This document shows, in pieces, positions 14,845 to 15,606 of a stretch of 64,000 bases of DNA. The notes beneath the pieces were generated by a model, which saw only the letters and a program-made list of their open reading frames with translations, was not told the origin of the DNA and made no database searches. A program made the position numbers and the translations under genes. The DNA is from Cycas panzhihuaensis (Eukaryota > Plantae > Cycadophyta), in NCBI GenBank assembly GCA_023213395.1, contig CM041465.1, positions 177,203,741 to 177,267,740 of the forward strand. Direction: 5' to 3'. Position 1 is the stretch's first letter. Each line of letters starts with the position of its first letter.

Positions 14845-15606
14845 ATTAAGTCATAGAAAAAGCATGCTGAGAAAGAGCGCAAGAAGCAAGAGGAGCTTCT
14901 TCGTGAACATGATGTGCTAAATAAAATGAAGACACAGGCTAAGAACTCAATTGGCAAGCAAGCTGACATGGTCAGAATCAATGAAGTTGCTATCCATAAC
15001 TTGGAAGCAGAAATTAGGAATTATTGTGATGCTGCAGAGAAGTAGGATAAGATTATACAATAAGTGGAAAGAGAACGCCAGAAATATGCTGTTGAAGCAT
15101 CATAAGTAGGAGTGAAATATATGTAGGCATTAGATGAGGTAAAAGCAAAGGAAATCTCTATAATTGACTTGCAAAAGAAGATTTTAGATGGTGAGAACTG
15201 TCTTAAGCAACAACAAAACCTGTATGAATTTGTTCGCAGTGAGCAGAATATGTACAGCAAGAATCTTGTTGATTCTGAGGATGAAATTAAGGAGTTGAAA
15301 TGATGAATGAAGATCATGAATAATCAAATTAAATAACTAAAAGAGGAAATCAATACAAAAGAGCTAGCACTAATAAAAGAGCACTTTGACTTTACCAAGG
15401 TTGAGAAAGAGAGAGAAGTGTTGAAATAGGATCTAAGTAGGGCACAACAGTAAATAAAAGAAGCTGAGGCTGTTATATCTTCCCATGTATCAAATGTGGA
15501 GAACTTGAATCATATTATTAGTGAAGTAGATGATGAAAGATTCCATCAAAAGAAAGAGCTTGACATTGTCAAAAGTGAAAGAGAAATATTAGCTAAACCA
15601 CTTATG
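14845..15606 (+). pseudogene. CFAP58: Captured fragment of cilia- and flagella-associated protein 58 (CCDC147/FAP58-FAP189 family)
   Basis: One frame with no frameshift: ...EELLREHDVLNK...LKQQQNLYEFVRSEQNMYSKNLVDSEDEIKELK**MKIMNNQI...QKKELDIVKSEREIL. This matches recalled CFAP58 LKQQQNLYEAVRSDRNLYSKNLVEAQDEI and RQKKELDQVISERDIL. Ten stops, each explicable as C>T at Gln/Arg codons. Confidence 0.92.

What the first reader, a model, noticed from the sequence alone, without database searches (positions are those of the whole stretch)
14845..15606. Uninterrupted ~250-codon fossil of the flagellar gene CFAP58 inside a plant retroelement
Seen: a continuous coiled-coil frame with CFAP58 signature blocks and no indels. 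Known: axonemal genes are retained in plants with swimming sperm (bryophytes, ferns, cycads, Ginkgo) and largely lost in conifers, gnetophytes and angiosperms. Inference: the host is a flagellated-sperm plant and the capture came from spliced RNA in spermatogenous cells. If the host is a conifer, this would be a relic of a lost flagellar gene.
Basis: partly seen in the sequence, partly recalled or inferred. Interest (0 to 1): 0.85.

Follow-up and report, generated by a model that had tools for sequence, protein, structure and literature searches.

The report
Dead CFAP58 cDNA fragment inside retrotransposon
A 750-base, intron-free but stop-riddled copy of the middle third of the sperm-flagellum gene CFAP58 lies backwards inside an old copia retrotransposon of a plant genome; it is one of very many host-gene scraps that such elements carry, and its main value is as a hint that the element once replicated in sperm-forming cells.

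Summary
Window 14857-15606 (+) is one frame of 250 codons that aligns without a gap to the central coiled coil of CFAP58 (Pfam PF21771; residues about 375-624 of about 870). It is not open. It has 9 in-frame stops, and a tenth at 14854. All nine sit where the closest relative has Q or R, so all are C>T changes.

The closest relative found is an unnamed transcript-like protein, P0423 (71.8% identity; tree support 100/100). Genomic ORFs of the same clade show introns at two sites that the window crosses seamlessly. An origin from spliced mRNA is therefore supported, but only by proxy.

The fragment directly abuts a myosin XI tail fragment on the same strand. Both lie antisense between the primer-binding site and gag of a truncated Ty1/copia (12946-17371, duplicated target ATCTT). 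That copia is nested in an older Ty3/gypsy.

It is probably a seed plant. A host with swimming sperm (Ginkgo or a cycad) is likely but unproven.

Gene-fragment capture by transposons is very common in gymnosperms. Other notes of this scan report the same antisense leader cargo elsewhere in this genome. Interest is moderate to low.

The parts
14845..15606 (+). CFAP58 central coiled-coil pseudogene fragment. Secure homology is 14857-15606, equal to 250 codons; 14845-14856 is a possible extension that includes a TAG where the relative has Q.
   Evidence: Pfam PF21771 on four pieces. Gapless alignments to full-length CFAP58. PDB 8glv CFAP58. Tree places it with P0423 at 100/100.
15043..15453 (+). 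Span holding the nine in-frame stops: 15043 TAG, 15061 TAA, 15103 TAA, 15124 TAG, 15301 TGA, 15304 TGA, 15334 TAA, 15427 TAG, 15451 TAA.
   Evidence: All nine align to Q (7) or R (2) of P0423, i.e. CAG/CAA/CGA changed by C>T.
15124..15129 (+). Site of conserved intron 1 in relatives (between codons 90 and 91, nucleotides 15126|15127). The window is continuous here.
   Evidence: P0419 reads one exon, then a 37-residue insert that starts with V and ends with Q (consistent with GT...CAG, 111 nt), then the next exon. Transcript-like P0423 and the window lack the insert. The same site appears in algal ORFs P0001, P0006 and P0013.
15397..15405 (+). Site of conserved intron 2 in relatives (after codon 181 or 182, about 15399|15400). 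The window is continuous here.
   Evidence: In P0030, P0415, P0416, P0417, P0419, P0421 and P0422, homology ends after the FDFTK(V) motif and is followed by unrelated AT-rich-coded residues. P0423 and the window continue with the next CFAP58 block. The same site appears in P0003, P0013 and P0045.
15597..15837 (+). Myosin XI globular-tail cDNA fragment that directly abuts CFAP58. The zone 15594-15612 could be assigned to either gene. There is one frameshift near 15700.
   Evidence: PDB 7kfl Myosin-17 residues 160-192 match 15597-15698 (E 6.5e-7). Residues 213-239 match within 15724-15837 (E 7e-4).
15903..16200 (+). Further candidate host pieces: a myosin motor-like motif at about 15903-15960 and a USP7/UBP12-13-like motif at about 16004-16200. 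These are leads only.
   Evidence: Read by eye in translations. Pfam and PDB searches of these short pieces found nothing.
16914..17371 (-). 5' LTR of the carrier Ty1/copia, running TG...CA.
   Evidence: Sequence read. Its first 18 nt in + coordinates are identical to 12946-12963. The duplicated target ATCTT follows at 17372-17376.
16900..16911 (-). Primer-binding site, an 11/12 match to the initiator-Met-tRNA type. It lies two bases from the LTR.
   Evidence: Pattern search; sequence.
12948..13364 (-). Copia gag N-terminus, about 139 codons with 4 stops, starting at the ATG at 13349.
   Evidence: Translation. Weak Pfam Retrotran_gag_2 hit (E 0.057). Weak tblastn match to the gag start of another copia in the window at 29649-29813.
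12946..12963 (-). Only remnant of the 3' LTR (its last 18 nt), preceded by the duplicated target ATCTT at 12941-12945.
   Evidence: The rest of 12946-13420 aligns to the LTR no better than shuffled sequence does.
10471..22426 (+). Older Ty3/gypsy that hosts the copia. Its LTRs are 10471-10824 and 22051-22426 (K2P 0.257). Landmarks: gag zinc-knuckle 12676-12888, protease 17560-17709, RT 19752-19892.
   Evidence: Domain names come from motifs read by eye.

Best explanation
The stretch is a dead, intron-less cDNA copy of the central third of the axonemal coiled-coil protein CFAP58. It is the longest block of a head-to-tail mosaic of host mRNA pieces; myosin XI follows it directly and at least two more candidates follow that. 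The mosaic lies antisense in the leader between the primer-binding site and gag of a Ty1/copia element.

Most likely the copia reverse transcriptase switched templates onto host mRNAs packed in the same particle. It joined them at short overlaps and then returned to the element. The antisense orientation fits switching during plus-strand DNA synthesis, which starts just behind the primer-binding site.

The chimeric element then integrated into a Ty3/gypsy, duplicating the target ATCTT. Later it lost most of gag, all of pol and nearly all of its 3' LTR. It was silenced and decayed mainly by deamination of methylated cytosines. The fragment has no function now.

Shown: identity, gapless frame, stops, absence of two conserved introns, abutment to myosin XI, position and orientation in the copia, nesting.

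Inferred: template switching, which strand was being made, the cell type of capture, and the timing.
For: Identity.

Spliced origin: the window is continuous across two intron sites that are present in the genomic ORFs of its closest clade (P0417, P0419-P0422, P0030, P0415) and absent in the transcript-like P0423. Both sites also occur in green algae.

Direct junction with a second host cDNA on the same strand.

Carrier element: LTR, primer-binding site, gag and duplicated target.

No other CFAP58 piece exists in the 64 kb.

Decay pattern: GC>AT transitions number 28 against 5.7 in the reverse direction, on both strands, and all stops arise from Q or R codons.

Literature: LTR elements do transduce intron-less host fragments, Bs1 being the classic case, and abnormal template switching is an accepted route (PMC13317346). 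Gymnosperm genomes hold about 400,000 TE-captured gene fragments each (PMC13477047).
Against: - The host's own CFAP58 locus was not seen, so the intron argument rests on relatives.
- The cargo starts about 700 nt from the primer-binding site, not directly behind it.
- Only this one copy is available, so it is not shown that the cargo ever transposed with the element.
- The 3' LTR is almost gone, so there is no LTR-pair dating of the copia.
- A 43-nt GT...AG-like stretch (15961-16003) next to the UBP-like piece may be intron remnant. That would mean not every piece came from fully spliced RNA.
- Transduced genes are usually in sense orientation (PMC7264820).
Confidence: 0.68

Rival explanations
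1. A LINE-made chimeric processed pseudogene, formed when LINE reverse transcriptase switched between mRNAs. It then inserted by chance, in opposite orientation, into the leader of an already resident copia.
For: A nearly intact LINE with endonuclease, RT and RNase H ORFs lies in the same window at 56256-62372. All cargo pieces share one orientation. LINE template switching is known to make chimeric retrocopies (general knowledge).
Against: No poly(A) tail was found at the 3' end of the chain and no flanking target duplication. The pieces are internal coding segments, not 3' ends of mRNAs. Other notes of this scan report the same antisense leader cargo in many copia elements of this genome (unverified).
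Confidence: 0.13
2. DNA-level acquisition. Either cDNA or genomic scraps were used as filler in double-strand-break repair inside the copia, or a nested DNA transposon (Pack-MULE or Helitron type) brought gene pieces in.
For: A GT...AG-like 43-nt stretch with a pyrimidine tract precedes the UBP-like piece. This hints at unspliced or genomic origin for that piece. Mosaics with short overlaps are typical of filler DNA (general knowledge).
Against: CFAP58 lacks two conserved introns, so it passed through spliced RNA. No terminal inverted repeats or Helitron ends were found around the cassette.
Confidence: 0.1
3. A decayed exon of the native CFAP58 gene that was overrun by transposons.
For: The frame is preserved without indels.
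Against: It lies within the boundaries of a copia that has its own target duplication. It is fused to a myosin XI tail. It crosses two conserved intron sites. No other CFAP58 exon lies within 64 kb.
Confidence: 0.02

Closest known systems
CFAP58 (CCDC147; Chlamydomonas FAP58), an axonemal coiled-coil protein of the doublet microtubule seen in PDB 8glv, 8j07 and 9fqr
   Same: Residues equivalent to about 372-621 of the 868-residue Chlamydomonas chain. The Pfam CFAP58_CC domain matches collinearly and without gaps.
   Different: Only about 29% of the protein is present. There are 9-10 stops and no start. It lies antisense in a transposon. It is a pseudogene fragment, not a gene.
Maize Bs1, an LTR retroelement with transduced intron-less pieces of three host genes
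   Same: Several unrelated host coding fragments, without introns, sit inside an LTR element (PMC13317346).
   Different: The Bs1 fragments are in sense orientation and form a hybrid ORF with gag. Here the cargo is antisense, lies in the leader between primer-binding site and gag, and is dead. PMC7264820 states that transduced genes are usually in sense.
TE-captured gene fragments of gymnosperm giga-genomes
   Same: An old capture of an exon-derived fragment by a Ty1/copia in a large, AT-drifted, TE-rich plant genome. About 400,000 such fragments per genome are reported (PMC13477047).
   Different: The donor is a sperm-flagellum gene, the fragment spans at least three exons, and it is part of a multi-gene mosaic. 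The paper reports that only about 14% of host TEs carry two or more fragments.
LINE-mediated chimeric retrocopies
   Same: A same-orientation mosaic of cDNA pieces joined at short overlaps.
   Different: No poly(A) tail, no target duplication of its own, internal coding pieces only, and it is enclosed by LTR-element landmarks.

Membership tests
CFAP58 (Pfam PF21771 CFAP58_CC) | Match to the family profile above Pfam's gathering score (27 bits) | tested here: met
   The pieces score 49.7, 59.6 and 27.6 bits; the 30-residue piece scores 20.0. All are collinear at profile positions 4-252.
CFAP58 (Pfam PF21771 CFAP58_CC) | Orthology: groups with CFAP58 proteins rather than other coiled-coil families | tested here: met
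   Gapless 250-residue alignments to full-length CFAP58. The best PDB chains are all CFAP58. The tree places it with P0423 at 100/100 inside the green-lineage group.
CFAP58 (Pfam PF21771 CFAP58_CC) | Intact, full-length coding gene | tested here: not met
   There are 9-10 in-frame stops and only residues about 375-624 of about 870. No other piece lies in the window.
Spliced-RNA-derived (processed) copy | Absence of the parental introns | tested here: met
   Met by proxy. Two intron sites present in the genomic ORFs of the closest clade and in algae are crossed seamlessly. The host's own locus could not be fetched.
Spliced-RNA-derived (processed) copy | Poly(A) tail and its own target duplication (LINE-type retrocopy) | tested here: not met
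   None was found at the cassette ends.
LTR-retrotransposon transduced gene fragment (Bs1 type) | Host fragment lies between the LTR-element termini, which are flanked by a target duplication | tested here: met
   ATCTT at 12941-12945 and 17372-17376, with LTR ends at 12946 and 17371.
LTR-retrotransposon transduced gene fragment (Bs1 type) | Sense orientation relative to gag-pol | tested here: not met
   CFAP58 and myosin XI are on the + strand. The primer-binding site, gag and the LTR polarity are on the - strand.
LTR-retrotransposon transduced gene fragment (Bs1 type) | Cargo propagated with the element (same cargo in several copies) | not testable with these tools
Ty1/copia | TG...CA LTR, initiator-Met-type primer-binding site next to the 5' LTR, 5-bp target duplication | tested here: met
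Ty1/copia | Copia-type gag and a pol gene in the order integrase before RT | tested here: inconclusive
   The gag N-terminus gives only a weak Pfam Retrotran_gag_2 hit (E 0.057) and a weak match to another copia gag in the window. pol is absent, and the 3' LTR is reduced to 18 nt.

The most novel reading that the evidence does not exclude
The antisense stack of host cDNAs in the leader between primer-binding site and gag records a specific replication accident: plus-strand DNA synthesis of a copia particle continuing on cellular mRNAs. Because CFAP58 mRNA should exist only in sperm-forming cells, this fossil, together with the other flagellar fragments noted in this genome, would timestamp heritable copia retrotransposition to the spermatogenous cells of a seed plant with swimming sperm.
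Probability: 0.22. Interest if true: 0.65.

Novelty: new member of a known kind. Interest (0 to 1): 0.35.

Why it matters
On its own this is one more transposon-carried gene scrap in a genome type known to hold hundreds of thousands of them, and it has no present function.

It matters in two modest ways. First, a transcript restricted to spermatogenesis inside a heritable retroelement copy is a natural marker of where and when the element replicated. Second, it is a clean, well-delimited example of the antisense leader mosaics that seem recurrent in this genome and that differ from the classic sense-oriented transduction. It offers 750 bases, two verifiable exon junctions and a direct junction to a second gene.

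If the host turned out to lack swimming sperm, it would be a relic of a lost gene. The age estimate makes that unlikely.

Tried and rejected
No parental or relative locus DNA could be fetched.
- The metagenome scan with P0421 was swamped by marine algae and did not return the close relative's contig.
- The first full-length CFAP58 search, with an algal query, returned no land plants among the 120 rows listed.
- Cluster look-ups gave no organism names for the closest relatives.
- Rfam and tRNA scans of the element found nothing.
- Pfam and PDB searches of the short myosin-motor-like and UBP-like pieces found nothing.
- No second LTR was found: 12946-13420 aligns to the 5' LTR no better than shuffled sequence does.
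- No poly(A) tail, target duplication or terminal inverted repeat delimits the cassette.
- I considered that the absence of indels might mean past selection and rejected it. Given the window's own indel rate, P(0) is about 0.01-0.07.
- I considered strand-specific hypermutation and rejected it. G>A and C>T are balanced at 15 and 13.
- The read-through protein was used only inside scripts, with X at each stop. Database tools received stop-free pieces by reference.

Full report
**1. The observation**

The + strand frame that begins at 14857 can be read for 250 codons to 15606 without any frameshift. It is not open. Nine stops interrupt it, at 15043, 15061, 15103, 15124, 15301, 15304, 15334, 15427 and 15451.

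Because the tools here take no read-through proteins, I searched the four stop-free pieces separately.
- All four hit Pfam CFAP58_CC at profile positions 4-65, 95-151, 164-193 and 210-252. These are in the same order and spacing as in the DNA.
- PDB searches gave CFAP58 of the Chlamydomonas axoneme (8glv) as the best chain, then mammalian CFAP58.
- The ESM Atlas returned CFAP58 clusters.

Inside scripts I read the frame through with X at each stop. It aligns with zero gaps to every full-length CFAP58 retrieved, for example residues 375-624 of the Cymbomonas/Pyramimonas protein (146/241 identical, E 2e-94).

**2. Closest relatives and the exon-junction test**

An HMMER scan of 1.84 billion representatives with the best piece listed among its hits a short Logan ORF, P0030. 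It shares derived residues with the window, such as the motif FDFTKV where other lineages have FDHMKV. Searching with P0030 and reading its clusters gave a small clade:
- P0423, a 725-residue CFAP58 on a 3-kb Logan contig, which looks like a transcript;
- short ORFs from about 1-kb genomic contigs: P0415 to P0417 and P0419 to P0422.

P0423 matches the window gaplessly over residues 223-472, with 173/241 identical (71.8%) against 60.6% for the best alga. In a maximum-likelihood tree, window and P0423 join with 100/100 support inside the green-lineage group.

The genomic ORFs show where introns lie.
- P0419 reads through one exon end, then 37 unrelated residues beginning with V and ending with Q, then the next exon. 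This is what a GT...CAG intron of 111 nt gives in frame.
- All seven genomic ORFs (P0030, P0415, P0416, P0417, P0419, P0421, P0422) lose homology after FDFTK(V) and continue with AT-rich-coded junk.
- P0423 and the window are continuous at both places (nucleotides 15126|15127 and about 15399|15400).
- The same two sites are seen in ORFs from green algae, so they are old and conserved.

The window fragment therefore covers parts of at least three exons with the introns precisely removed.

**3. Decay**

All nine stops align to Q (7) or R (2) of P0423, so all are C>T changes of CAG, CAA or CGA. Of 23 Q positions, 7 have become stops.

Among 68 single-step replacements relative to P0423, G>A (15) and C>T (13) far exceed A>G (4.7) and T>C (1). 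They are balanced between strands. This is the signature of deamination of methylated cytosine in silenced repeats, not of one-strand hypermutation.

The surrounding DNA is 28-31% G+C. The LTRs of the enclosing gypsy differ by K2P 0.257, with transitions three times transversions. At commonly used gymnosperm rates that is tens of millions of years; this step is an inference and the rate is uncertain.

The lack of indels is not remarkable. LTR pairs and a tandem duplication in this window show 0.03-0.054 gap events per substitution. That predicts about 3-4.5 indels, so P(0) is roughly 0.01-0.07.

**4. Context**

Self-alignment shows a Ty3/gypsy on the + strand, with LTRs at 10471-10824 and 22051-22426. 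By eye its gag zinc-knuckle, protease, RT and integrase tail lie at about 12.7, 17.6, 19.8 and 21.6 kb.

Between gag and protease sits a 4426-bp insertion, 12946-17371, flanked by the duplicated target ATCTT. This insertion is a copia on the - strand, with these landmarks:
- a 458-bp TG...CA LTR at 16914-17371;
- two bases further on, a primer-binding site of the initiator-Met type at 16900-16911 (11 of 12);
- 3.5 kb downstream, a gag N-terminus of about 139 codons at 13364-12948, supported only weakly by Pfam and by a weak match to another copia gag;
- immediately after that, only the last 18 nt of the LTR (12946-12963).

The rest of gag, all of pol and nearly all of the 3' LTR are missing. 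The simplest explanation is a later internal deletion.

The CFAP58 fragment lies in the long leader, antisense to the element. It is followed without a spacer by a myosin XI globular-tail fragment on the same strand. PDB 7kfl Myosin-17 residues 160-192 match 15597-15698 (E 6.5e-7), and residues 213-239 match within 15724-15837. Bases 15594-15612 can be assigned to either gene, so a short overlap at the joint is possible but cannot be proven after this much decay.

Two further pieces on the same strand look like a myosin motor motif and a USP7/UBP12-13 motif. The tools did not confirm them, and I treat them as leads. No other CFAP58 piece exists in the 64 kb.

**5. Mechanism**

The best-supported reading is capture of spliced host mRNAs by the copia's reverse transcription, followed by integration, truncation, silencing and decay.

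The antisense orientation and the leader position fit template switching while the plus strand is being made, since that synthesis resumes just behind the primer-binding site. This is inference. Here about 700 nt separate the primer-binding site from the first recognisable cargo.

Other first-stage notes, and one follow-up in this scan, describe the same arrangement in many copia elements of this genome, with donors such as enolase, ubiquilin, NUP50 and several flagellar genes. I did not test those. They show that the scan has seen this theme before on other DNA of the same genome.

The rivals are a LINE-made chimeric retrocopy inserted into the copia, DNA-level filler or DNA-transposon capture, and a native exon relic. 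They are weighed in the Rival explanations section. Their main weaknesses are the lack of a poly(A) tail, of a target duplication and of terminal repeats around the cassette, together with the missing introns.

**6. Host**

The protein collection holds no exact copy of a window ORF.

The 551-residue LINE RT ORF has one 78% Logan match. Its best named relatives are Cryptomeria and Pinus taeda at about 42%, followed by angiosperms, with no fern or bryophyte among the 120 rows. That suggests a seed plant.

Among seed plants only cycads and Ginkgo keep the flagellar gene set; conifers, Gnetum and angiosperms lost much of it (PMC9023351). The fragment is roughly as diverged as LTR pairs that are tens of millions of years old. 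Sperm motility was lost in conifers far earlier than that (general knowledge). A host that still has swimming sperm is therefore the likelier case (my estimate is about 0.8), but it is not shown.

**7. Comparison and novelty**

As a protein relic it is a member of CFAP58 by sequence and not a gene.

As a genomic object it belongs to the known kind 'host gene fragment carried by an LTR retrotransposon'. Examples are Bs1 and the survey of about 400,000 captured fragments per gymnosperm genome (PMC13317346, PMC13477047). It differs from the classic cases in orientation: transduced genes are usually in sense (PMC7264820). It also differs in lying in the 5' leader within a multi-gene mosaic.

I rate it a new member of a known kind, with interest 0.35. 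The more novel reading, plus-strand switching onto mRNAs in sperm-forming cells, stays open at about 0.22.

Noticed in passing
window 12946-12963 and 16914-16931: The carrier copia keeps only the terminal 18 nt of its 3' LTR, joined directly to gag codon ~139. The duplicated target is intact, so either a large internal deletion or an aberrant reverse-transcription product removed about 4-5 kb.
   Followed up: partly
window 15581-15600 and 16697-16716: An 18/20 direct repeat links the last bases of the CFAP58 block, where three consecutive codons differ from relatives by transversions, with a site in the copia leader. About 0.2 such matches are expected by chance, so this is unexplained rather than significant.
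   Followed up: partly
window 14801-14853: A G+C-rich block with surviving CpGs lies directly upstream of the CFAP58 fragment in otherwise AT-drifted DNA. It has no Rfam or tRNA match, and its homology to the upstream CFAP58 residues is doubtful. It may be another captured piece.
   Followed up: partly
window 15961-16003: A 43-nt stretch that starts GT, ends in a pyrimidine tract plus AG, and lies between the myosin-motor-like and UBP-like pieces. It could be joined remnants of two introns, which would mean some cargo came from unspliced RNA or from DNA.
   Followed up: no
window 14570-14625 and 14770-14783: A-rich runs on the + strand lie upstream of the CFAP58 block. They are possibly poly(A) remnants of further captured mRNAs in the same orientation.
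   Followed up: no
window 56256-62372 (- strand): A comparatively young, G+C-richer LINE with long ORFs (245, 142, 551 and 448 residues). The Pfam families listed for the RT ORF's relatives include endonuclease, RT and RNase H. Its best database match is 78% to an unnamed Logan protein, and its named relatives are conifers at about 42%.
   Followed up: partly
window 24645-26792: A 1.1-kb tandem duplication (79% identity) in a strongly C-over-G-skewed stretch (GC skew -0.69 on the + strand).
   Followed up: no
window 27703-34054: A second copia on the + strand, with LTRs 86.5% identical. About 1.6 kb separates its 5' LTR from the gag start. No host-like piece was recognised there by eye.
   Followed up: partly
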